From assembly GCF_006345805.1 (NCBI RefSeq), contig NC_043001.1:105524001-105588000 (forward strand): a DNA stretch of 64,000 nt, written 5' to 3'. The DNA is from Octopus sinensis (Eukaryota). Positions within the stretch are counted from its first letter, which is position 1; each line of letters opens with the position of its first letter. This document shows, in pieces, positions 14,919-62,598 of the stretch. The position numbers and the translations under genes were made by a program. The notes under the pieces are model-generated. The model did no database searches and was not told the origin of the DNA. It was given only the letters and a program-made list of their open reading frames with translations.

Positions 14919-15707
14919 GTGTGTATGCATGTATGTGTGTGTGTATGTATGTACACCTATGCACGTATAGGGGTATGGATATGGTCGGTAAAATGACGGA
15001 TACATAGAGGAAATTGAAAGCAAAGAAACTAATACAATGAATCTCCTTTTTTTCAAACAGATTTGATCAGAAATTTCGGTAAACTTCAAAGCACATTGAT
15101 TGCTTCCATGCTAGGTTTTTTACCAGAAAACATCGTGCAGCAAGAGAGTGAACTAATTACTAACTAATTATTGATACAGAAATACTTTCTTATTGTTGCG
15201 GTAATTAAGAGGGGAAAGTTATTGATATTTTCAATTATTCATAATTTGTTTGGGAAAATAAGATAATAAATAAATAATTAAGAACAAGTCATCAAGGTGT
15301 ACAAATAAATGCATAAACATGATGACAATTCAGATACTGAAACCTGACTTTGAGAAACAAATGAACAAGCTAATGATAAAATAAGTCGTGATAACGTTAT
15401 AAATTTGCATTAGGACGGCAACACGTACTCTGAAATTACGCGCTATTTTGTATGCAGGCATTGGTAGAACCGAGATTATGGCGGACGATAGCAGTGTGTA
15501 GCGTTACTCGGATCGAGATTAATGGAAGCTAAATTACTTTGAACATGCAGCCAAATATGCACATATCAACTGTACTCGAACGCAAAGATTATGCTCCCAA
15601 ATTCAACAACCTACGTATCCAGACACACACGCGAACACATATAAGCGTCCACACATATATACATATGTACATAAATGTACTCACGCATGCGTACATAAAT
15701 ACCCACA

Positions 15708-15857
15708 GGTGGAACATTGCTATTGAGAGAAACGGTTACTATGTTGAGAAGTAAGGATGTGATGCACAGAGGACCAGCTTCATTTTGATGTATGATACGT
15801 GTTCCTGTGTTGGTAATTATACCTGTCCTAAATATAGTGGCATTACTTTTTGACTCA
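15708..15857 (+). mobile_element. Mariner 3'-end fragment (same family as 54964-55517)
   Basis: ggaacattgctattgagagaaacggttactatgttgagaagtaag...ggcattactttttgactca matches 55365-55511. Confidence 0.85.
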
Positions 15858-15871
15858 TATTTCTACATATT

Positions 15872-15941
<70 letters not shown>

Positions 15942-16253
15942 GTAGAAGAGAAAGAAAGAGAGAGAGAGAGAGAGATGTAGATATAAATATATACGTCGCT
16001 GTCTCTTTCTCTCTCTCACTGTATAATTTACATAATATATATAATATATATATATATATAATTTATATAATATATAATATACATATACATACGTATATAT
16101 ATATATGTATAATTTATATAATATACATAATATGCATTTATATATATATAATATAAATATATATAATTTATGTACTATATATAATATACGTATATATATG
16201 ATATACATACATATATATATACATATATATACAATTTACATAATATATGCAAT

Positions 16254-26180: not shown

Positions 26181-26679
26181 TGGAAGATGGTATAAAACAG
26201 TAAACGATAATTAACAAAAGAAGCTGTTTGTTGAAGTAAATATCGTAAACGTATCCAACTCATTCTGCAACGAGTTTCGTTTTATATAAAGATTAATGGT
26301 TTATATAGAATACTTCACAAACGTAATTCAGTTGGAACGAAACATTCTGCTGGCGGTTCATACGCTAGCAAAAGATCATAAATTATAGTAAACAATTTAT
26401 AGGAAATACGAGACACGGCAACATGTACGTTTGTTCCAATCCATCGCAGTTCACCAGATTTAAGAAGATTTCAATATGAAGTAACTCGGTGAAATAAAAC
26501 TAAGTCTCAAACGCTTTAGGCGTAATATCTTCGTATTTCATTTCTATGTAATTGTATTTCGGATATTTTCAACTTAAAAGACAAATCATGATACAACTTA
26601 CGACTACAGATATCAAAAGAACCGCCATTACTATGTATAGAATATCTGTTCTTCACCTTGGTTTTTGATACACGACACT

Positions 26680-26810
26680 CCTTCTTCTTCTTCTTCTTCT
26701 TCTCTTCTTCTTCTTCTTCTTCTTCTTCTTCTCTTCTTCTTCTTCTTCTCTCCTTCCACTTCACCTTTTTCTCGTCCTCCTTTTTGTCCTCCACTTTCTT
26801 CATTTTCTTC

Positions 26811-26843
<33 letters not shown>

Positions 26844-27028
26844 TTCTTTTTCTTCTTCTTCTTCTTCTTCTTCTTCTTCTTCTTCTTCTCTTCTACTTCT
26901 TCCTTTCCTTTCTGTTCTCTTCCTCCCTTTCTTCTTCTTCACCTTTTTCTCCTCCCCCCCACATTCTTCTTTTTCATCTCCTTCATCATCATCATCATCA
27001 TCTTCTTCTTCTTCTTCTTCTTCTTCTT

Positions 27029-27063
<35 letters not shown>

Positions 27064-27195
27064 GCTTCTTCATTTTCTTCTCTTGTGTCTACTCTACTAA
27101 AGATTTTCGGAATATTTTCTCCCAAAATTCAGTACTAATTTTATTATTTGTTCAAGACACACACACACACACACACGCACACACACACACACACG

Positions 27196-27227
<32 letters not shown>

Positions 27228-27300
27228 CACACACATACACACGCACACACACACACACACACGCACCCACACACACATGTGTATATGTGTGTGTGTGTGT
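26680..27300. repeat. Compound (CTT)n/(CAT)n/(CTA)n tract followed by (CA)n
   Basis: Direct reading; source of the spurious poly-E/K/F/S ORFs. Confidence 0.95.
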
Positions 27301-27810
27301 ATGCGTTTCTCAGTAAGAGCATTTGATCCCTTAATAATTTTGCAATAAGTTCAAATAGGAAAACTGCCTCAAAATTATAGATAATCAAAGGGTTTCCCGA
27401 GGCCACACAATCACAAGAAAGCAGCGTTAGTAATAGTAAGGCTGATGGCATCACAATGGTAACATTGTCCTTTTAAGTGCCTCTGTAAACATCAGCATGT
27501 TAGTTCGTTATATGTTGCTCGTGTGTGCACAGGTTAGTATATATATCCATCTATATATTATATTGTATTCCACGCTAAAGCAAAACCAAAGTAGAACGAG
27601 TATCTCGAGTCATTTAGAATAGTTTAATTAGGGTAAGGTGAATTTGAAGTCTTACAGCCAATTGTGGGATAACCCAAGTGGTAGGTTAGCAGGTTTACGC
27701 ACTGGGTATACCGTCATCAAAGACAAAGTATGACTATTGTAGAAAGAAGAAAATTTTGATTTACAAAGTATAAAATAGAATTCACACACACACATACACA
27801 CACACATATG

Positions 27811-27843: not shown

Positions 27844-29815
27844 GATGTCTTGCAAACAACTTGCACATGCAAGTGCTACCAGTTAAAAGCTCCGTATATC
27901 GGAAGCTAGCAAGTGTATGGGGTCACCAGGAGAGAATGCGCGCCGTTTCGGGGCCTACCTCTCGACGGCATCAATGCGCACTGATATGAGGCCCCGCTTG
28001 CTAGATCAGCTGGTTATGAAGAACTCAATATACTTCTAGCCATCGCTCGTCGTCTCTTTTTAACCAAATCCAGTGGCTAACCTTCTCCACTGTAGATTGG
28101 ATATCAGTCATGGTAGTATTGACTTTACGATGAGTTAGGCCTAGCGATAACAACAGTCGTCTCACGCTGTGTCCTACAAACCCTCTACATCTGACTTCGA
28201 TAGGAAAATGTTCCGCTTTCCAGCCTGCGTCTTCACATTCATCGAGGAGGTTTTCATAACGGTTCAATTTTCGAGCCCGAGCGGCGTCCATATTATCTTC
28301 GTGAGGAACCGTTAGCTCGACTATATTTACAACTTTCTTTCTTTTACACCACATCAAAATATCTGTTTTTTTCGAAACTGGGTTGGGAAAGAAAACCTGG
28401 CACCCGGGTAAATCTGCAGTTACCTCCCAATAGCCGTTCCACTTTTCATTTTTCTCAGGAAGTTTCTTGGTCTTCTTCTTGAAACAGATCCGCTGACCTG
28501 GTCGCACGAAGGTAATGAAATCTCTTGATGGTACTTTTAACGATTTTTCGTTAGGTGATTCGTAGGTGATGGCAAAACATCATAAGATGAACGATTTTTC
28601 CTCAGTGTTGTTGAGATGAATTTGGTTCTTTATAGCATTGAAGATAACCTTTAGGACCAAGTTGTGCCTCCATGTGTACCTGTTCAATGCTAATGAACAG
28701 TTGGAAAGAATATGTTTTAGTGTACCGACCTTTCCACATTTGCAGATGTCATTCTCTAAGACGTTCCATCTTACTAGATTCGTACGTGATGGCAAAACAT
28801 CATAAGATGAACGAATCAGGAAACTCAGTCGAGATGTCGTCCACTTCCACATCTCATCCCAACTTATCTTCCTCTCAACAACATGTTCTTCCCATCTCGT
28901 CATCTGACCTTGATGAACACATCGGATCAAATGAAGCTCTCTTCTCTCTGCTTCTCTCGTTTTGACGCTGTTGTTAACAACAGATCTGCGTTCACACAGC
29001 ATCATGCTTGCAAACGGTCTGAACTGATCTGCGCCAAAACCAAATCCTTTCCGATGGTTCTGCGTTGCTCCCACCATATCTCTGTGTATAAGAGAAGACA
29101 AGATGTTGTCAGTTTCTGCTTCTGCTTTCCACTTCCTGGCTGTTTTCACCTCTGGTGGGTTACGCCTGATTTCCATATCCTTCGATTCTCTCAGCATCAT
29201 GACCATCTGTATCTTCCCCTACTTAAATATTTCGACTATTGATACTATTGGTAGCTGCAACGAACCTCTTTTACGATAAAGAGCTGAGCTGTTCAACATA
29301 CGGAGTAGACCTAGCCACTTTCTAATGAACACATTACATTTTTGTTCAATCCTTTCAACTCGTAACGATGCTACTTCGTATATTAAAAGTGGCCACGCAT
29401 GTCGCGGATACAAGCCGAACTGCAAGGACCAAATTTTATATTTACCTGGTAACTTCGAATCGCTGATAACCCAGCCTCGGCCTGTTTCATAATTTCAATC
29501 CCACGACTTCTGTCTGACAATGTTCCAGCGTATACTCGTCCCAAGCTCTTGACGGGCTCTTCCTTGACTGTTGGAATGCTTTCTTCAGATATTCGAAATT
29601 TAACTTCTTTCTGCACTCCCTTAACAAATGTCAGACTACGCGACTTTTTTGCTCTAAATCGCATCCTTGACCACCTTACAAGTTCGTCTGTATTTTCTCT
29701 TCTTGTTTCTTTCTGTGTTCCTTTCTGTGGAAGAGGGTAAGCTCGTACCGTTAAAGAGTTTTTCACTTCCCGAGCATTAAACATCCCTTTGTTGTCTACA
29801 CCACCTATCTCCATC
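27843..29815 (-). mobile_element. 5'-truncated, frameshifted HERO-like RLE non-LTR retrotransposon, copy 2
   Basis: Consecutive frames: WSRMRFRAKKSRSL..IPTVKEEPVKSLG; QFGLYPR.AWPLLIYEV..RKWLG..ALY..LQLP; CKCGKVGTLKHILSNCSLALNRYTWRHN; W..TADLP..TDILMW..VELTVPHE..IEVRCRGFV. RT YxDD motif absent. About 180-bp 3' UTR ending at a (TA)n tract. Confidence 0.9.
28025..28507 (-). pseudogene. Restriction-like endonuclease (PD-(D/E)xK-type) domain of HERO copy 2
   Basis: ORF of 160 aa with KTDILMW...ELTVPHE...RK...Y. Confidence 0.85.
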
Positions 29816-44365: not shown

Positions 44366-45189
44366 TCATTTAGGTACATCACCTCTTTCGAAATAGTCAC
44401 TTTCCGCTGGAATACACTGGTCCCAGCGTTTCTGCCAGTTTTGGCACCCGGCCTGCAAGTCATTTTCCGTAAGCGAGTCGAGGACCTTCTGCGATTCGGT
44501 CCGGATCTCGACAACGGTGTTAAAACGACGTCGTTTGAGCTGCATTTTCATATCGGAGAAATGCTGGAAGTCCGCAATTGATAAATCTGGCGAATACGGC
44601 GAGTGCGAGGGCGAGACCCTCATGTTTTGGAGAACTCGGTCACAGGGTACAATGCGTCTGTGAAGAATCAAATTTTTCCGCTCCATGTACCCGGTCGCTT
44701 TCGCAATATGTCCTTCCACAAACCTTTCAAAATGTCGCGTTAGAACTCTTGGTTGACGGTCTGGGACTGAGTGGGAGGTATGTGGGTAGGGGTTGATGCA
44801 GAAATCACATTTCTGAGCGTAACACTCGTGGTAGGTCTTCGGAATCGCTCATCGTCTTCGAAGGAGGTTATTCTGCTTTTGAAGTGCCGGTGTCACTTGC
44901 AACTTTCTATACGACCCATTAATTCATCCCCGAAGCTTGCCGAAGCATGTTCAATGCCACTGTAGCAGTCTTGCCAAGTTTAATGCAAAACACCACATTG
45001 ATTCTTTGTTCCTGTCAGTAACAGCAGGCAGCACACAGAGATCTTCATAACTTGTAAAGTTTTCACAGCGATGTCACTTCGCACACTGCTTTACGAAAGT
45101 TACTGCTAGGCCTCACTACCCACGTGACCGTGTGCTGCCTTTGTTGGCGCGCTACAGTACTAGTTCGAAGACCTTTTAATATCTCCTCT

Positions 45190-53164: not shown

Positions 53165-54648
53165 TCTTTTCTAGTTTCAGCTCAGAGCTGCGGCCATGCT
53201 GATGCACCGCCGTTTTGTGCTACACTTTTGTTACGACGAACCTCGTCTAATATGTGCCACTTGGGGAAGAATGGAGTTTGATACAGCTACTCTCATTTGC
53301 ACCTCTTGCCGTGAGGTAGGTTCATCTGGGACTCTTGACAGGAAGAGGTCCAGCTTTGATTTAAAAACCGCTACATCTACTTTGTGCAAGTTCCTCAGAC
53401 TCTTTGGAAGAATATTAAAAAGCTGTGGGCCCTTGAAACCCAGGCTGTTGCAGAAGCTGTTCCTGAAGCGTGATGGCATTGCTGGGATCTTTGGCACTAC
53501 GCAGTGTCGTCCCGTTCTAGCATTGGTGTAGCTTACAATGCCAAAATTTGGCACAAATCCTTCCAGGATCTTCCAGACATATATCACTGCACCCCTCTCC
53601 CGTCTTCTCTCCAGGGAGTAGAGTCTTAGCTGTTTCAACCTTTCCCAGTAGCTGAGCTGTTGTAAAGAGACGATCTTCTTTGTGAATCTTCTCTGGATTG
53701 CTTCAAGGTCCGCTGTTAATTTTACACTGGTGGGTGACCATAGCTGTGAGCAGTAATCCAGGCGACTGAGGACGAATGTCCGCCAGAGGACCATCATGGT
53801 TTCCTTATCTCTGGTTCTGAATGTTCTTAGGATCCACCCAGCCAGTCGTCTGCACTTTGTCGCAATCCTGGTAATGTGCACTTGGAAAGAGGTATCATCA
53901 CTCATGTCAATACCCAGGTCCCTCACAAACTTAGGCTCTGGGATTGAAATTCCCTGTGGACCGGTGTATCCTGTAAGTTTAATATTCCGTTTTGGATGCT
54001 GGTTGTGCAAGGCCGGGAATTTTTCAGCATTAAACTGCATATTATTATCCTCAGCCCATCTGTAGATTGAGTCCAACTCCTGCTGCAGGTGTGCAACATC
54101 GCTGGAGTTCTGTATTTTCTGCGAGACTTTCGTACCGTCTGCATAGCTGGCCAGAGTGGCTATCCGGGCATTTGAGGGCATATCTGAGAGGGCCACTATA
54201 AAAAGCAGTGGTCCCAAGACAGTGCCCTGTGGAACACCGCTCACTATTTGTGTGTTCATAGAGGTGGCTCCATTAACCACTACTGCCTGACTGCTATCTT
54301 TCAGGAAGTCATGCAACCACACTCCAAGTTTTCCTGCTATGCCGAGGTCACGTAGTTTGTGGCATATCATACCATGATCCACCTTGTCAAAAGCTTTTGC
54401 AAAATCAAGGTAGATTACGTCCACATTTGATTTGTTGAGTAACTGCCTCAACACCCAATCATAATACTGTAAGAGCTGGGTGAAACAGCTCCTACCTGGT
54501 CGAAAACCATGCTGGGTATTACTCAGCAAGTTATTTTCCTCAAGGAATGCGATTAGTTTCTTTCTGACTATCCGTTCCATGACTTTGCTGATGTGTGAAG
54601 TCAGAGAGATAGGCCTATAGTTTTTGGCATCTGCTCTACTTCCCCCAT
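53165..54648 (-). mobile_element. 5'-truncated CR1-clade LINE
   Basis: Starts at GGSRADAKNYRPISLTSHISKV; RT motifs QHGFR, YLDFAKAFD, SGVPQG.VLGP; short 3' UTR. Confidence 0.92.
53231..54580 (-). CDS. Reverse transcriptase (ORF2 3' part), catalytic motif YADG instead of YADD
   Basis: 449-aa uninterrupted ORF; agc tat gca gac ggt at about 54134-54148 (minus strand). Confidence 0.88.
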   Translation of the reverse strand: MERIVRKKLIAFLEENNLLSNTQHGFRPGRSCFTQLLQYYDWVLRQLLNKSNVDVIYLDFAKAFDKVDHGMICHKLRDLGIAGKLGVWLHDFLKDSSQAVVVNGATSMNTQIVSGVPQGTVLGPLLFIVALSDMPSNARIATLASYADGTKVSQKIQNSSDVAHLQQELDSIYRWAEDNNMQFNAEKFPALHNQHPKRNIKLTGYTGPQGISIPEPKFVRDLGIDMSDDTSFQVHITRIATKCRRLAGWILRTFRTRDKETMMVLWRTFVLSRLDYCSQLWSPTSVKLTADLEAIQRRFTKKIVSLQQLSYWERLKQLRLYSLERRRERGAVIYVWKILEGFVPNFGIVSYTNARTGRHCVVPKIPAMPSRFRNSFCNSLGFKGPQLFNILPKSLRNLHKVDVAVFKSKLDLFLSRVPDEPTSRQEVQMRVAVSNSILPQVAHIRRGSS

Positions 54649-54870: not shown

Positions 54871-54963
54871 CATACATATACATACATATACATATATATA
54901 TATATGTACATATATTACATACATAGATACACACAGACACACACACACACACATATATATATG

Positions 54964-55517
54964 CGAGGTTTAGTCAAAGAGTAATGTCATTTTGTTTAGG
55001 ACAGGTATAATTACCAACACAGGAACATGTATTATACATCAGAACGAAGCTGGTCCTCTGTGGATCACATCCCTAATTCTCAACATAGTTACAGTTTCTC
55101 TCAATAGCAATGTTCCACTTTCGAATGAGAGCATGTATCCCCTGCCCCGTAAAATTCTGTTGACTGTTCTTTGAGACACTTCTTCCCTACAGATTTCAAT
55201 TCCTCGTCACTGGAATGTTTGCCTCTCAAACCCTCTTTCGTGTCGCCGAAGTGATGATAGTCCGAAGGCGCTAAATCGGGTGAGTGTGGAAGTACTGAAG
55301 AAGTGGCTCAAAGAACAGTCAACAGAATTTTACGGGGCAGGGATACATGCTCTCATTTGAAGTTGGAACATTGCTATTGAGAGAAACAGTGACTAGATTG
55401 AGAAGTAGAGATGTGATTCACAGAGGACCAGCTTCATTTTGATGTAGGATACATGTTCCTGTGCTGGTAATTATATCTATCCAAAACAAAATGGCATTAC
55501 TTTTTGACTCACCCTCG
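54964..55517. mobile_element. Mariner-derived fold-back element built from two 3' ends
   Basis: Arms 54964-55185 and 55297-55517 are reverse complements. Minus strand 55290-55073 reads PHSPDLAPSDYHHFG..EFYGAGIHALIRKWN..YVEN*. Confidence 0.9.
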
Positions 55518-55915
55518 CACCTTAAATATAAAATGGTAAATTTCCTTTCGCCAAAATACGGGATTCTCGATAGGGAAAATCCAACAAACTTTATACTTAC
55601 ATGCCTTTGGACATATATCGCCATGTAAACAATACACTCAGTTTTCATGTTGGCTTCATGTTATCTTCAACGGAAAGCCAAGATGTCGGCATAGAATAAT
55701 ATAAGAGGAATATTCATCTAAGCAATTTAAGAAAACCTAGTGTTGCATCATGTTTCCAGTTTTATGATTTCTCGTTCTAAAAATGGTCATAATTATATTT
55801 TGAGTGGAACTAAAATTTTCAAAGTTATCACATTAGGCTTCATATAAATTTTGCCAAATGTATATATCCCAGCATTTTATGCAAGGAACTCTCTCTGTCT
55901 GTCTGTATGTCTGTA

Positions 55916-55961
<46 letters not shown>

Positions 55962-56830
55962 ACTCTCTCTCTCTCTCTACATGGTTCCTGAAACAGGAGA
56001 TCTACATCCAAACTAAACACCAGCATAATCGTCAACGCCAAACTATATGATTCCTGCAAAGATGTTTATCCTTTCTTATCCATTCAGACAGCAACAATAC
56101 AGCAAATTGTTTATCGGAATTATGATCTGAGTGAAAGATGCAAGTTATATTCTAAATATATCGCAAGTCTAAACATATGCTGGAAGTATGTAAAACAGCA
56201 AATAAGATTCTTGGAAGAGATTTATTGTATATTGACGATTACACGAAGCAAAAGCACGGTATAAATCTAATTTGTTAGTATGTTTTCATTGTCGATGTGT
56301 CAAATATTTCAAAATATTATCTTCCTATGAAATCTGCTTTTTTTTTACTTGGTTATAGGCTTCCATTGTTAATACTCTTCATGAAACTCTGTAGGCAAGT
56401 GGCACGCAGAAGAATTAAATGGTTTTGATAACATTTCAAAGAGCCCACGGGAAGTATACATGTATGTATGTATGTATGTATGTATGTATGTATGTATGTA
56501 TGTATGTATGTATGTATGTATTATGTATGTATGTATGTATGTATGTATGGTTGTGTGCATGTATGTATGCATACATGTATATATAAAAAATACAAAATGG
56601 GAGAAGAACGCAAAACATCCAGGCAGTTAGGTGATACAAAAATGGGACAACAAAACATCCATATAGACGATACAAAGAAAACAAGGACGGGTCATGGGAA
56701 CTTGTCTTTCCTCAGTCAAGTACCAGATTACCTCCGCAATCTCGGCTGATTATACTTGAGATTGCCCCAATCTGGCCAGCCCCCACATGTATATAGTCAT
56801 ATATCGTATGCCTAAGGGACATTTGCTACA

Positions 56831-57110: not shown

Positions 57111-57307
57111 TCTTACTTGTTTTGTCATGTGACTGCGGCCATGCTGGAGTACTGCCTTTAGTTGAGCAAATCTACCCCCAGAACTTATTCTTTGAACGTC
57201 TCGTACTTATTCTATCGGTGTCTTTACCGAACCTCTAGGTTACCGGGACGTAAACACGCCAACATCGGTTGTCAAGAAATATTGAGTGGACAAACACAGA
57301 CACACAA

Positions 57308-57310
<3 letters not shown>
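57111..57310 (-). mobile_element. SINE family A 3' half
   Basis: gactgcggccatgctggagtactgcc...acgtaaacacgccaacatcggttgtcaag...ggacaaacacagacacac. Confidence 0.85.
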
Positions 57311-58903
<1,593 letters not shown>

Positions 58904-59214
58904 ACACAACGGGCTTTTTGTGCATAACCAGTTTTTTTCCTTTTATTGTTCTATCAATAATATAGGCGTACCCTTTGTATAGAAGCTTTCTGCTTCCTTG
59001 TTCCGTTTTTATGAACTCTATGATCTCGCGCATGTCGGTTTATTGTCCCGTCAGCCAATTGTCCAATCGTCGAATTGTCTGCGCACGGATGTGCAGAGTT
59101 AATATTCGAAGGCAAGTGCTTCCCTGCAACTTTAAAGTCTATATATACTCCAGTAAATATACCAATGGACATATGCATATCTAAACGCAGCTTTTAGTCT
59201 GAGATAAAGAAATT

Positions 59215-59975
59215 ATGAAGGTCATGGTGGAATAAATTGCAATGCTTCCTTTCATAAAACTCATCTACGAGACTTTTAAATATTCATCGATAAAAAATCG
59301 GTGAGTTTTAACAGAGTCGATAAAGCACAGTAAACAGCACCTAGCATTATTATTTTTACTCTCTGCACGATATTGCCCTTCATTCTTTCGGGTCCGAGGA
59401 AAATGTCTCTATGGAATGCAGTGGTTAGTTAGAACGATGAGATTGCTGCAGTTTGCTCAGTTAGTTTACGCTCAAATTTCCAATGTTCCGTTGATGAACA
59501 ACATAATCACACTCCCTAGCACACTAATGTAAACATATGGAACTAGTCATCAGTTTAAGGAAACCTTCCTTCTTCCAAAATACCTGTATTCAGGGTCTCG
59601 AAGGCAGGTATTTGGGAAGAAGGAAGGTTTCCTTAAACTGATGACTAGTTCCATATGTTTACATTAGTGTGCTAGGGAGTGTGATTATGTTGTTCATCAA
59701 CGGAACATTGGAAATTTGAGCGTAAACTAACTGAGCAAACTGCAGCAATCTCATCGTTCTAACTAACCACTGCATTCCATAGAGACATTTTCCTCGGACC
59801 CGAAAGAATGAAGGGCAATATCGTGCAGAGAGTAAGAATAATAATGCTAGGTGCTGTTTACGGTGCTTTATCGACTCTGTTAAAACTCACCGATTTTTGT
59901 CGATGAATATTTAAAAGTCTCGTAGATGAGTTTTAGGAAAGGAAGCATTGCAATTTATTCCACCATGACCTTCAT
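59215..59975. repeat. Near-perfect inverted repeat: 372/371-bp arms, 18-bp spacer
   Basis: 59215-59586 is the reverse complement of 59605-59975, with 5 substitutions and one 1-nt indel; spacer tattcagggtctcgaagg. Confidence 0.97.
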
Positions 59976-62598
59976 TTCTTATTTCATCGATCGCAGTAAA
60001 AGTAATGAAGTCCATCCAGGGCATTGGAGTTGAGTGCGGCATAAAATAAGATAACAGCAACACAGAAGATAACACAACCGTTCATTGATGGTTGCAGTGA
60101 TTCCACTTCCTATACGCTAATAACGCCATTAAAATGCATTAATGCCTCAACATATCTATGTAAACGGCTTGTAAGCCTTGAAACGTAGTTTATTATCCAA
60201 AATGTTTTGAAATTGTCGCAGTACAACATTAATTCTGGGTGTATTAAAATACGGAGATTATTCTAAAGATAGAAAATTGAGCTTTCATAACACGATTTAT
60301 ATATTTTATCATTACATTCGAAAATAACAAATTTTCTCATTTACAATTTTGCCAAATTCCTTTTCTATGTTTCTGTTTTGAAACATTTATCTACAGCAAT
60401 TTGGTAACTTATTTACTGAATTGATGAAATTGAAAGAAACCAATTGATTTTTTTATAAGCTCTGAGGTTTTTCTCCATAAACATCTTTAAGTCTTTGATA
60501 CCATTATGGCAATGATCATTTTCGCAATAATAGCATGTACCCACTTTATGTATTATTGAATATGCTGTTTCAGAGAATTTATACGACGAGAATATTATCA
60601 AAATTTCATTTTTATTTCAATCAATCTCATACATTTCAGATCACTTGTTTATGATTTATTTATATAAATCCTATTTGGTTTTGTGACTTACTCAAATTTA
60701 TATTCAAATCCGACCGCACTCTGAGTGGTTTGCAAATTATCTTAAATATTAGAGTACATTCGTAATTCAAAATACATGTATATAATGCAGAAAATAAAAT
60801 TGGTAACAATGGAAGACAAAACTTGTTATGTCAAAGTCATACGTACGTAATACTATTCACGTGCATGCACTGATTAAGTATTAATTGTTTCCTGAGATCT
60901 TATGATTAAATCCTCCATAGTTTGAAATTTTCACTGAATATTTCTATGCTACAATGCTGTCTTAAATCTATCGTACAAATTCCGACGGCAACGGGACACT
61001 TTTGAGCGAGAAACTGGTGTGTTTACTCAGTTCAAATCCAAATCATACAGTAACGCCATTATGATTCATACGAAAGGAATTTATTTTCTGAAATGCAAAT
61101 GTTATTAGAATACGATTATGGCATTTAACTATCTTTACGAGTATATTCCTAAGGTGTGTCCGTGTAATTGAATAAAGATAGCGTATATTACTTGAACGTA
61201 TTCAATCCGTAATCTACTGTCTAAAGAAATGTGAATAATATGATCTCAGACGGACGAGAACTTGGTAAAATGGAAACAAAATCAGCAAAACCATAATGCA
61301 ATCAAATAGTGTATTCGTTTCGTCTCAATGGACTCCTATCAACTTTGAAATGTGATTAAGCAGGTAAAATTTTATTGTCGCAATTTCATGCAGGTCGTTT
61401 AATTCAATTTCGATGTAGGTGTACATTTTATATGTAATTTGAATAACTAATAAAGATTTCACACTATTCATTTTGGTAGTTTCATTTACTAACGTTTCTT
61501 AGAAATACTCGTGTATTTTGGACAGCGGATAAGGCGTATGCAATGCAAACATTTTCCGAGGATTACTGTTCATTCATTCATTCCTGTCAACAATATTGCC
61601 TGTTGTACAAACAATTGTATTGAGACAATACATTTTTCGACAGCAGAATTAGTGGCCCGGCGGACAGATATTCTTAGGAGACAGTCATTATAAAATGGAA
61701 GCATAAGAAAAAGAAAATGATGGCTAGGAGACATAGTAAATTATGTGTATTATATAGAAGATTTGCTAGGACTTGTATGCCTCGGATTTTAACAATATCC
61801 TTCATCGCTATACAGATATAGCGACATATAACATGCGCACGATTCTGGAATATACTTCAAGTAAATAGTTGAAACATTCGATCATATGCTGTCACTAATA
61901 TAAAGAAATGGACCGAATGCGTTTCTGTGTGTGTGTGTGCGCGTGAGTTTGCGTGTGGTTGAGCATGATCGGAAGTTAAAAGAATATCTAAAGAAAGTGA
62001 GCTACATGGAAATGGTTAGGTGCATATTTGGATGAAAGTACAGCCACCAGGCAACTGTCAAATTAATGGGCCACATTCTAAACAGTTCATCGCTTCTATT
62101 CGTCTTCGGACGTATTTTGGTTTTCCGAGTGGACACTGAAATTAGTACACCCCCCACCCACACATACACACACAGACACATACAAATATGCAAGGAAGTT
62201 ATATATTTGCGAACACAAAAATCACGAAAAAGATACGTGAAATGTGGGGACGGGTTAGCTCTAAAGCAGGCCCGTTTTGTTTATAATGAACAGCAGATAT
62301 AAGTATCTGACGATTTATACTGTGACAAAGTGTACAGACAGCTAGAATCCTAATATACAAGTAGCATTTATTTTTTTTCATTTTTCCTCTAACATAAACT
62401 TTATTCCCATTTAGAAATCTGAAATGTAATCATCACAAAAATAAATAAAATAACTTTTTAAAAAAACTAGAATCTAAGGGAAAAATCAAGAGAGAAACAT
62501 GTTTTATTACCAACAAAAATGAGCAAGCTATAATAAGGTATACATATTTTGAATCATGCGCTGAGCGCATTTATGTGTGTCAGTGTGTGTATGTAAGA

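What the first reader, a model, noticed from the sequence alone, without database searches (positions are those of the whole stretch)
59215..59975. 760-bp near-perfect palindrome with an 18-nt loop
Seen: arms of 372 and 371 bp with only 5 substitutions and 1 indel, including about 220 bp of perfect identity. No clean TIR or TSD is visible, the match frays at the outer edge, and the arm contains a SINE-B-like scrap (ttgcccttcattctttcgggtccga). All five substitutions put a G in the right arm on the + strand (3 T>G, 2 A>G). Known: long palindromes with short spacers are unstable and, if transcribed, give long dsRNA (Dicer/ADAR substrates; coleoid cephalopods edit RNA heavily). Inference: a recent fold-back duplication, a hairpin-RNA locus or a fold-back transposon; the G bias also leaves an amplification or assembly artefact open.
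Basis: partly seen in the sequence, partly recalled or inferred. Interest (0 to 1): 0.7.

Follow-up and report, generated by a model that had tools for sequence, protein, structure and literature searches.

The report
Single-copy 760-bp DNA palindrome
A real, near-perfect 760-base DNA palindrome lies in repeat-rich, non-coding cephalopod sequence 310 bases from a 1.5-kb AT microsatellite; it looks most like a recent local inverted duplication of ordinary DNA, not a transposon or a gene, and is of modest interest.

Summary
The arms are 59215-59586 and 59605-59975 (372 and 371 nt), with 5 substitutions, one 1-nt indel, a 221-bp perfect block and an 18-nt spacer. The spacer itself pairs down to an 8-nt tip. 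It is by far the youngest duplication in the window: 98.4% arm identity against at most 89% for any other repeat pair.

The arm has no second copy in the 64 kb. There is no target-site duplication longer than 2 nt, no recognisable terminal motif, no sub-repeats, no ORF over 38 aa, no Pol III boxes and no Rfam family at threshold. The "SINE scrap" is a relic of about 30 nt.

The G bias is real and non-random (P about 0.008; about 0.0005 with two more G mismatches at the spacer edge). It is transversion-rich and not ADAR-like.

My best reading, at about 50%, is a local fold-back or template-switch inverted duplication, possibly linked to the neighbouring 1.56-kb (AT)n tract. A low-copy fold-back transposon (about 20%) and an assembly or sequencing artefact (about 15%) remain open. 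No reads, second assembly or genome-wide copy count could be reached.

An siRNA-producing hairpin locus is unlikely, because molluscs reportedly lack a dedicated endo-siRNA pathway.

The parts
59215..59586 (.). Left arm of the palindrome (372 nt, 37% G+C)
   Evidence: Alignment; the repeat finder. It carries A or T at every mismatch position.
59587..59604 (.). Nominal 18-nt spacer, TATTCAGGGTCTCGAAGG. Inside it TTC (59589-91) pairs with GAA (59600-02) around an 8-nt tip, AGGGTCTC (59592-99).
   Evidence: Sequence; folded structures. 59587 T / 59604 G and 59588 A / 59603 G are two further mismatches with G on the right side.
59605..59975 (.). Right arm of the palindrome (371 nt), reverse complement of the left arm, 98.4% identical
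   Evidence: It carries G on the + strand at all five mismatch positions (59614, 59836, 59862, 59899, 59936).
59191..59214 (.). Left outer 'fray' zone: weak, gapped complementarity to 59976-60002
   Evidence: The extension score is not significant, P about 0.06.
59976..60002 (.). Right outer 'fray' zone
59373..59406 (+). Relic of about 30 nt resembling the middle of the window's SINE family, mirrored at 59785-59818 in the right arm
   Evidence: There are no A or B boxes within 2 mismatches in a meaningful position.
57348..58904 (.). 1,557-bp imperfect (AT)n microsatellite, 310 bp to the left of the palindrome. It is self-complementary and a possible source of breaks or fork stalling.
   Evidence: TRF (period 2, 800 copies, 85% matches). 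It is the longest of five (AT)n tracts in the window.

Best explanation
This is a genuine, evolutionarily recent local inverted duplication of about 372 bp of ordinary non-coding DNA.

Inferred mechanism:
1. A 3' DNA end arose at a double-strand break or a stalled fork, plausibly provoked by the hairpin-prone 1.56-kb (AT)n tract 310 bp away.
2. That end folded back on its own strand, or switched to the complementary template, at a very short inverted repeat at the present centre (TTC/GAA, or ACCTG/CAGGT).
3. It copied about 372 nt in the reverse direction.
4. It was then joined back to the other side with little or no microhomology.

The product is a hairpin- or cruciform-capable palindrome with an 8-18-nt tip. 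The one-sided, all-G mismatches would then have one of two origins:
(a) They are errors of that single pass of low-fidelity synthesis: dGTP or 8-oxo-dGTP inserted opposite A and T while the right arm was made as the + strand.
(b) They are later G>T / G>A damage confined to the minus strand of the left arm.

The anatomy is shown. The mechanism, the role of the (AT)n tract and the polarity of the mismatches are inferred. No function is implied: the palindrome is most likely a neutral, unstable structural variant.
For: - The palindrome is real and far beyond chance.
- The arm occurs nowhere else in the 64 kb, and both flanks are unique.
- Arm identity is 98.4%, while the next most similar repeat pair in the window is 89%. 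It is therefore the youngest duplication here, not a member of the window's old repeat families.
- There is no TSD of 3 nt or more with matching termini and no sub-repeats.
- The arms have no ORF over 38 aa, and the two flanking ORFs tested (58954-59178, and 59911-60075, which overlaps the last 65 nt of the right arm) have no Pfam hit.
- The centre has exactly what a fold-back primer needs: a 3-bp stem closing an 8-nt loop.
- The mismatches are strand- and arm-coordinated, P about 0.008 for 5 sites and about 0.0005 for 7.
- The mismatches are enriched for the A/C-type transversion class relative to the window's own older repeats: 4 of 5 against a 20% baseline, P about 0.007. That is expected of one asymmetric event rather than of ordinary two-sided neutral decay.
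- Fold-back ('snap-back') templated inverted insertions at breaks are documented (PMC11724301, PMC5728401, PMC2943611, PMC4912351). So are replication template switches that create perfect inverted repeats (PMC5453318, PMC7954356).
- Only about 1% of window positions lie within 310 bp of the largest (AT)n tract, and about 5% lie that close to any (AT)n tract.
Against: - Documented fold-back insertions are mostly 5-34 bp (PMC11724301), ten times shorter than this arm.
- The outer junction shows no clean microhomology.
- Neither arm can be identified as the original.
- Copy number outside this window is unknown.
- No read-level or second-assembly support could be obtained.
- The transversion enrichment weakens to 3 of 5 (P about 0.06) under the alternative placement of the indel.
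- The (AT)n adjacency is a post-hoc observation.
Confidence: 0.5

Rival explanations
1. It is a copy of a low-copy non-autonomous DNA transposon made almost entirely of long terminal inverted repeats (a fold-back- or MITE-like element), or two head-to-head copies of one repeat.
For: - A unit of about 760 bp that is all inverted repeat with a short loop is the classic shape of such elements.
- The window is transposon-rich. It holds a LINE RT ORF, SINE copies and an inverted pair of another repeat at 54962-55519.
- A low-copy family would not be expected to recur within 64 kb.
- The 2-nt TT or AT flanks cannot be ruled out as a tiny TSD.
Against: - There is no TSD of 3 nt or more with matching termini at any boundary offset.
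- The ends fray rather than stop sharply.
- The arms contain no sub-repeats.
- There is no other copy or partial copy in the window.
- There is no paralogous empty site.
- Two 22-mers of the arm are absent from the three public collections that could be scanned, although these hardly contain cephalopod DNA.
- The one-sided G mismatches are not what independent decay of two TIRs gives.
Confidence: 0.2
2. It is an assembly or sequencing artefact. A fold-back chimeric molecule or read was built into the consensus, or base calling or polishing errors in the second arm of a real or spurious inverted repeat created the G differences.
For: - All mismatches share one base on one arm and one strand.
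- 3 of the 5 arm mismatches are T>G immediately before a G, a pattern also seen in phasing- or dislocation-type miscalls.
- Nanopore reads lose accuracy specifically after an inverted-duplication junction (PMC7229812).
- The gap-free 1.56-kb (AT)n tract implies a long-read assembly.
Against: - A fold-back chimeric read is palindromic to its end. Here the palindrome stops at 59215/59975 and is embedded between two different, unique flanks, which would need two switches in one molecule.
- The spacer is not, as far as I recall, a SMRTbell or hairpin adapter. This is a judgement from memory, not a test.
- Context-specific consensus errors would affect both arms symmetrically, because the + strand of one arm has the sequence of the - strand of the other.
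- There is no other sign of false duplication in the window.
Confidence: 0.15
3. Whatever its origin, the locus functions as a hairpin-RNA gene or regulatory dsRNA, acting as a Dicer or ADAR substrate.
For: - As RNA either strand folds into a 372-bp duplex of -685 kcal/mol.
- Long inverted repeats give hpRNAs and siRNAs in flies and plants (PMC8728187).
- Coleoid cephalopods edit RNA heavily (general knowledge).
Against: - There is no evidence of transcription.
- There are no Pol III boxes.
- No Rfam family reaches threshold, and the sub-threshold miRNA hits at the tip are generic perfect-hairpin matches.
- The arms show no coding-gene origin.
- Molluscs including O. bimaculoides lack siRNA-class Dicer/Ago and siRNA-like reads (PMC12479628).
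- The genomic G differences are mostly T>G, not A>G.
Confidence: 0.07

Closest known systems
Fold-back ('snap-back') templated inverted insertions at double-strand breaks (SD-MMEJ / Pol theta-type end joining; PMC11724301, PMC5728401, PMC2943611, PMC4912351)
   Same: The inverted copy lies directly next to its template. The turn sits at a very short inverted repeat with a loop of a few nucleotides. The join to the other side has little microhomology. The synthesis is error-prone.
   Different: Described events are tens of bases (about 5-34 bp in yeast), whereas this arm is 372 nt. Nothing here shows which polymerase or pathway acted.
Replication template-switch mutations that create or perfect inverted repeats (PMC5453318, PMC7954356)
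   Same: A nascent strand copies the opposite strand and returns, which yields a perfect hairpin-forming repeat and a cluster of apparent substitutions.
   Different: These events are typically shorter than 100 nt and usually convert existing sequence rather than adding about 390 bp.
Human palindromic AT-rich repeats (PATRR11/17/22; about 190-600 bp; PMC1851657, PMC4940405)
   Same: A single-locus, several-hundred-bp, near-perfect palindrome with a minimal spacer that is capable of cruciform extrusion and is expected to be unstable and polymorphic.
   Different: This palindrome is not AT-rich relative to its genome (63% A+T against about 65% for the window). No translocation or polymorphism data exist for it.
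Long inverted repeats / hpRNA loci (LIRBase, PMC8728187; Drosophila hpRNAs)
   Same: The geometry matches: two long arms and a short loop give a long RNA hairpin if transcribed.
   Different: The arms are just under the 400-nt LIRBase cut-off. No target-gene homology, expression or small RNAs are shown. The host clade appears to lack the siRNA pathway (PMC12479628).
Fold-back / long-TIR MITE transposons
   Same: Overall shape and size.
   Different: There is no TSD, no defined termini, no sub-repeats and no second copy in 64 kb.

Membership tests
Fold-back / MITE-type DNA transposon | Target-site duplication flanking the element | tested here: not met
   A scan of all boundary offsets finds only 2-nt TT or AT. 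No direct repeat of 3 nt or more coincides with matching termini.
Fold-back / MITE-type DNA transposon | Sharp terminal inverted repeats with a superfamily-typical end motif | tested here: inconclusive
   The ends are ATGAAGGTCATGG / CCATGACCTTCAT. Beyond them the match frays, P about 0.06. I recognise no motif, but no transposon library was available.
Fold-back / MITE-type DNA transposon | Multiple dispersed copies in the genome | not testable with these tools
   There are no further copies in the 64-kb window. There are no hits in the metagenome, viral or prokaryote collections, which are not cephalopod genomes.
Fold-back / MITE-type DNA transposon | Arms built of tandem sub-repeats (Foldback family proper) | tested here: not met
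   TRF finds no tandem repeat inside 59191-60002.
Fold-back / snap-back templated inverted insertion | Inverted copy contiguous with its template, with the turn at a short inverted repeat | tested here: met
   The arms abut across an 8-18-nt tip, with TTC/GAA and ACCTG/CAGGT pairing at the turn.
Fold-back / snap-back templated inverted insertion | Microhomology at the outer junction with the other break end | tested here: inconclusive
   The only feature is an offset, imperfect TTCTT(T)AT similarity, which is not significant.
Fold-back / snap-back templated inverted insertion | Size range of described events (tens of bp) | tested here: not met
   The arm is 372 nt against about 5-34 bp (PMC11724301).
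hpRNA / siRNA-producing long inverted repeat | Transcription and 21-22-nt small RNAs from the arms | not testable with these tools
   No RNA data were available. The literature reports no dedicated endo-siRNA pathway in molluscs (PMC12479628).
hpRNA / siRNA-producing long inverted repeat | Arms homologous to a target gene | not testable with these tools
   The arms have no ORF over 38 aa. No cephalopod genome or transcriptome was searchable.
PATRR-type palindrome | Near-perfect palindrome of several hundred bp with no or a minimal spacer | tested here: met
PATRR-type palindrome | Marked AT-richness | tested here: not met
   The arm is 37.4% G+C, slightly above the window's typical 33-35%.
miRNA precursor families mir-4716 / mir-2767 (Rfam) | Score at or above Rfam's gathering threshold | tested here: not met
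   The scores are 51.1 bits against 76, and 40.7 against 69. Hits occur on both strands at the hairpin tip, and there are no hits at the gathering threshold.
Octopod tRNA-type SINE of this window | Homology along the element, and Pol III A and B boxes | tested here: not met
   Only about 30 nt align. No B box lies within 1 mismatch, and no A box either.

The most novel reading that the evidence does not exclude
The seven arm differences are not later mutations. They are the fossil error signature of the single pass of low-fidelity synthesis that created the palindrome in the germ line. All are G on the + strand of the right arm, most are T>G, and several lie next to a G. On this reading the locus is a natural record of long-range (about 370 nt) snap-back synthesis next to a fragile (AT)n tract in an animal genome. 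Its error spectrum would be strand-coordinated dGTP or 8-oxo-dGTP misinsertion.
Probability: 0.15. Interest if true: 0.55.

Novelty: new member of a known kind. Interest (0 to 1): 0.3.

Why it matters
If real, this is a clean, datable example of how long palindromes arise in an animal germ line. Such structures are rare because they break, and they are often lost or garbled in assemblies.

Its position beside a 1.5-kb (AT)n tract and its one-sided G-only mismatches would make it a small but useful natural experiment on fold-back synthesis and its fidelity.

For genome annotation the practical message is more modest:
- It is a non-coding structural oddity and a likely polymorphic, unstable site.
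- It is a place where read mapping, PCR and nanopore base calling will misbehave.
- In a transcribed intron it would form a perfect 372-bp dsRNA in an animal with very active ADARs.

Nothing found here suggests a gene, a new class of element or a new mechanism.

Tried and rejected
- Independent copies or assemblies. Exact look-ups found nothing: two flank or boundary ORFs in the contig index, then one further flank ORF, one arm ORF and eight other window ORFs, mostly transposon ORFs, in the protein collection. Two arm 22-mers gave 0 hits in the JGI metagenome, IMG/VR and prokaryote genome collections. The species' genome is evidently not in the searchable data: the best relatives of the window's LINE RT are only 72% identical, or 60-63% in Argonauta hians.
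- Known RNA family. Nothing reaches the gathering threshold in the whole window. The sub-threshold miRNA hits at the tip were rejected as structure-only matches of a perfect hairpin. No tRNA genes were found.
- SINE-derived element. Rejected, because only about 30 nt are similar and there are no A or B boxes.
- TSD or empty-site evidence for transposition. None found.
- A real outer extension of the palindrome to 59191/60002. Not significant.
- ADAR footprint in DNA (retro-copied edited RNA). Rejected, because 3-4 of the 5 changes are T>G.
- CpG deamination. Rejected. The only CpG-associated site (ACGG against ACTG) is a transversion.
- A resemblance of the right outer flank (GATGAAATAAG) to the Drosophila P-element end, recalled from memory. 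Not pursued as evidence: the left end does not match and there is no 8-bp TSD.
- Host-gene or intron context. Not resolved, because no splice-aware or cephalopod protein resource was available.

Full report

Yes. Reading 58900-60300 and aligning the left half against the reverse complement of the right half gives:
- a left arm 59215-59586 (372 nt) and a right arm 59605-59975 (371 nt);
- five substitutions and one 1-nt indel (59291);
- a perfect block 59356-59576 (221 bp);
- an 18-nt spacer 59587-59604.

The repeat finder reports the same structure as two gapless pieces. As a single strand the region folds into one hairpin of -459 kcal/mol (DNA) or -685 kcal/mol (RNA), z about -56 and -61 against shuffles.

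All five mismatches have A or T in the left arm and G on the + strand in the right arm. The T>G: A>G split is 4:1 or 3:2, depending on how TA-versus-G at 59291/59292 is aligned.

Two refinements:
- The spacer is not fully unpaired. TTC (59589-91) pairs with GAA (59600-02) around an 8-nt tip. The two positions between that stem and the arms (59587 T / 59604 G and 59588 A / 59603 G) again put G on the right.
- The outer 'fray' out to 59191/60002 is not better than chance, P about 0.06. The palindrome therefore effectively ends at 59215/59975.

**2. Context**

The window is AT-rich eukaryotic DNA (33-35% G+C) full of microsatellites and retroelements.
- A 449-aa RT ORF at 53231-54580(-) matches Pfam RVT_1. 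Its closest named relatives are Argonauta hians proteins at 60-63% identity, so the source is a cephalopod, probably an octopod.
- SINE copies lie at about 13.4, 23.4, 33.3, 45.9 and 46.1 kb.
- Immediately to the left of the palindrome, 310 bp away, is a 1,557-bp imperfect (AT)n tract at 57348-58904. It is the longest of five (AT)n tracts in the window.
- No Rfam family reaches threshold anywhere in the window, and there are no tRNA genes.

**3. What the palindrome is made of**

- One arm has no other copy in the 64 kb. The only hits elsewhere are 25-34-nt matches of 59368-59401 to the SINE copies.
- A sensitive alignment shows that this similarity covers about 30 nt, scoring 20-22 against 12 +/- 2 for shuffles, and does not extend.
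- There are no Pol III A or B boxes.
- The arms contain no tandem sub-repeats and no ORF over 38 aa.
- The two ORFs tested next to them (58954-59178 in the left flank, and 59911-60075, which overlaps the last 65 nt of the right arm) have no Pfam hit.
- Both flanks are unique in the window, and the joined flanks find no paralogous 'empty site'.
- A systematic scan of every boundary offset finds no direct repeat of 3 nt or more that coincides with matching termini. Only TT or AT is found.
- A self-comparison of the window shows that the next most similar repeat pair is 89% identical. At 98.4% the palindrome is by far the youngest duplication here.

**4. The G bias**

A simulation placed substitutions on either arm under a uniform or an AT-biased spectrum.
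- It gives the pattern 'all mismatches share one base in one arm' in 0.8% of trials for five sites and 0.05% for seven.
- The class of change is also unusual. In 36 older repeat pairs of the same window, 58% of 1,046 mismatches are transitions and 20% are A/C-type transversions. In the palindrome 4 of 5 are A/C-type (P about 0.007), which weakens to 3 of 5 (P about 0.06) under the other indel placement.
- Three of the five arm G's are directly followed by G, as is one of the two at the spacer edge.

Interpretation (inference from established knowledge):
- The pattern is not an ADAR footprint, which would be A>G.
- It is not CpG decay.
- Read as right-arm T>G, it is what misinsertion of dGTP or 8-oxo-dGTP opposite A gives (the MutT-type A:T>C:G class), on a single nascent strand.
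- Read as left-arm C>A, it is the 8-oxoG class (G>T) confined to the minus strand of one arm.
- Either reading calls for an asymmetric, single-strand process. An outgroup is needed to choose between them.
- Deterministic, context-dependent consensus errors should be symmetric between arms, because the + strand of one arm has the same sequence as the - strand of the other. Such errors therefore do not readily explain the asymmetry.
- Nanopore reads do lose accuracy specifically in the second arm of an inverted duplication (PMC7229812). With skewed strand coverage this could leak into a consensus.

**5. Best explanation (about 50%)**

A recent local inverted duplication made by fold-back or template-switch synthesis. 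A 3' end turned at the short inverted repeat at the present centre, copied about 372 nt of its own or the complementary strand, and was rejoined.

These points fit the model:
- single-copy, ordinary non-coding content;
- absence of transposon hallmarks;
- a minimal loop with a 3-bp closing stem;
- very high arm identity;
- strand-coordinated mismatches.

The mechanism class is documented for short events at breaks (PMC11724301, PMC5728401, PMC2943611, PMC4912351) and at replication forks (PMC5453318, PMC7954356).

The neighbouring (AT)n tract is a plausible trigger. Only about 1% of window positions lie that close to it, but this is post hoc.

Against the model:
- Known fold-back insertions are about ten times shorter.
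- The outer junction has no clear microhomology.
- Neither arm can be called the original.

**6. Rivals**

- Low-copy long-TIR transposon (about 20%). The shape is right and the window is transposon-rich. It lacks a TSD, an end motif, sub-repeats and a second copy, and genome-wide copy number could not be tested.
- Artefact (about 15%). The G pattern invites suspicion. However, a fold-back chimeric read would be palindromic to its end, whereas this palindrome is bounded by two different unique flanks.
- Functional hairpin RNA (about 7%, not exclusive of origin). The fold is certain if the locus is transcribed, but transcription is unknown. A survey of 32 molluscs including O. bimaculoides found no siRNA-class Dicer/Ago and no siRNA-like reads (PMC12479628). 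Long inverted repeats as such are common: 297,317 with arms over 400 nt in 77 invertebrate genomes (PMC8728187).

**7. Comparison with known kinds**

- In mechanism it is closest to snap-back or template-switch inverted duplications.
- In structure it is closest to human PATRRs, which are about 190-600 bp near-perfect palindromes (PMC1851657). It is not AT-rich relative to its genome (37% G+C).
- It fails the tested membership criteria for MITE / Foldback elements, for the window's SINE and for any Rfam miRNA family.

**8. Verdict**

The feature is real and accurately described. It is probably a young inverted duplication, a new member of a known kind. The statistically one-sided G mismatches and the adjacent giant (AT)n tract are the only unusual aspects.

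Reality at read level, copy number, polarity of the mismatches and transcription all remain untested, because no reads, genome or RNA data for this species were reachable.

Interest: 0.3.

Noticed in passing
window 57348-58904: A very long (1,557 bp, about 800 units) imperfect (AT)n microsatellite, assembled without gaps. (AC)n at 57290-57348 abuts it, and (ATGT)n at 56460-56584 and (CT)n at 55889-55978 lie further upstream. Such tracts are self-complementary and known fragile sites in other organisms.
   Followed up: partly
window 54883-55519 and 15707-15944: A second, older inverted pair: arms 54962-55185 and 55297-55519, 89% identical, 111-nt spacer. It is made of a repeat that also occurs as a solo copy at about 15.7-15.9 kb. 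It is an example of an ordinary inverted repeat pair formed from a dispersed family, in contrast to the single-copy palindrome.
   Followed up: partly
window 53231-54580 (-): An intact-looking 449-aa reverse-transcriptase ORF of a LINE-type element (Pfam RVT_1, E = 5.5e-23). The best database relative is 72% identical, and the closest named relatives are Argonauta hians at 60-63%. No hit above 72% was found, so this species' genome is apparently not in the protein collection.
   Followed up: partly
window 28025-29814 (-) and 283-1084: Three consecutive ORFs (143, 208 and 160 aa) of another retroelement-like sequence with no Pfam hit. An 81%-identical copy of about 0.8 kb lies at 283-1084.
   Followed up: no
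window 44366-44719 (-): A 117-aa ORF that by eye resembles the C-terminal part of a mariner-type transposase (...SPDLSIADFQHF...LKRRRF...). Pfam gave no hit at E <= 0.01.
   Followed up: no
window 26631-27326: A low-complexity (CTT)n/(GAA)n block of about 400 bp followed by (AC)n. It produces long spurious ORFs rich in E/D/K or F/S on both strands.
   Followed up: no
window 59544-59648: The hairpin tip scores 51 bits against Rfam mir-4716 and 41 bits against mir-2767, both well below their gathering scores and on both strands. This illustrates that any perfect palindrome attracts sub-threshold miRNA-model hits.
   Followed up: yes
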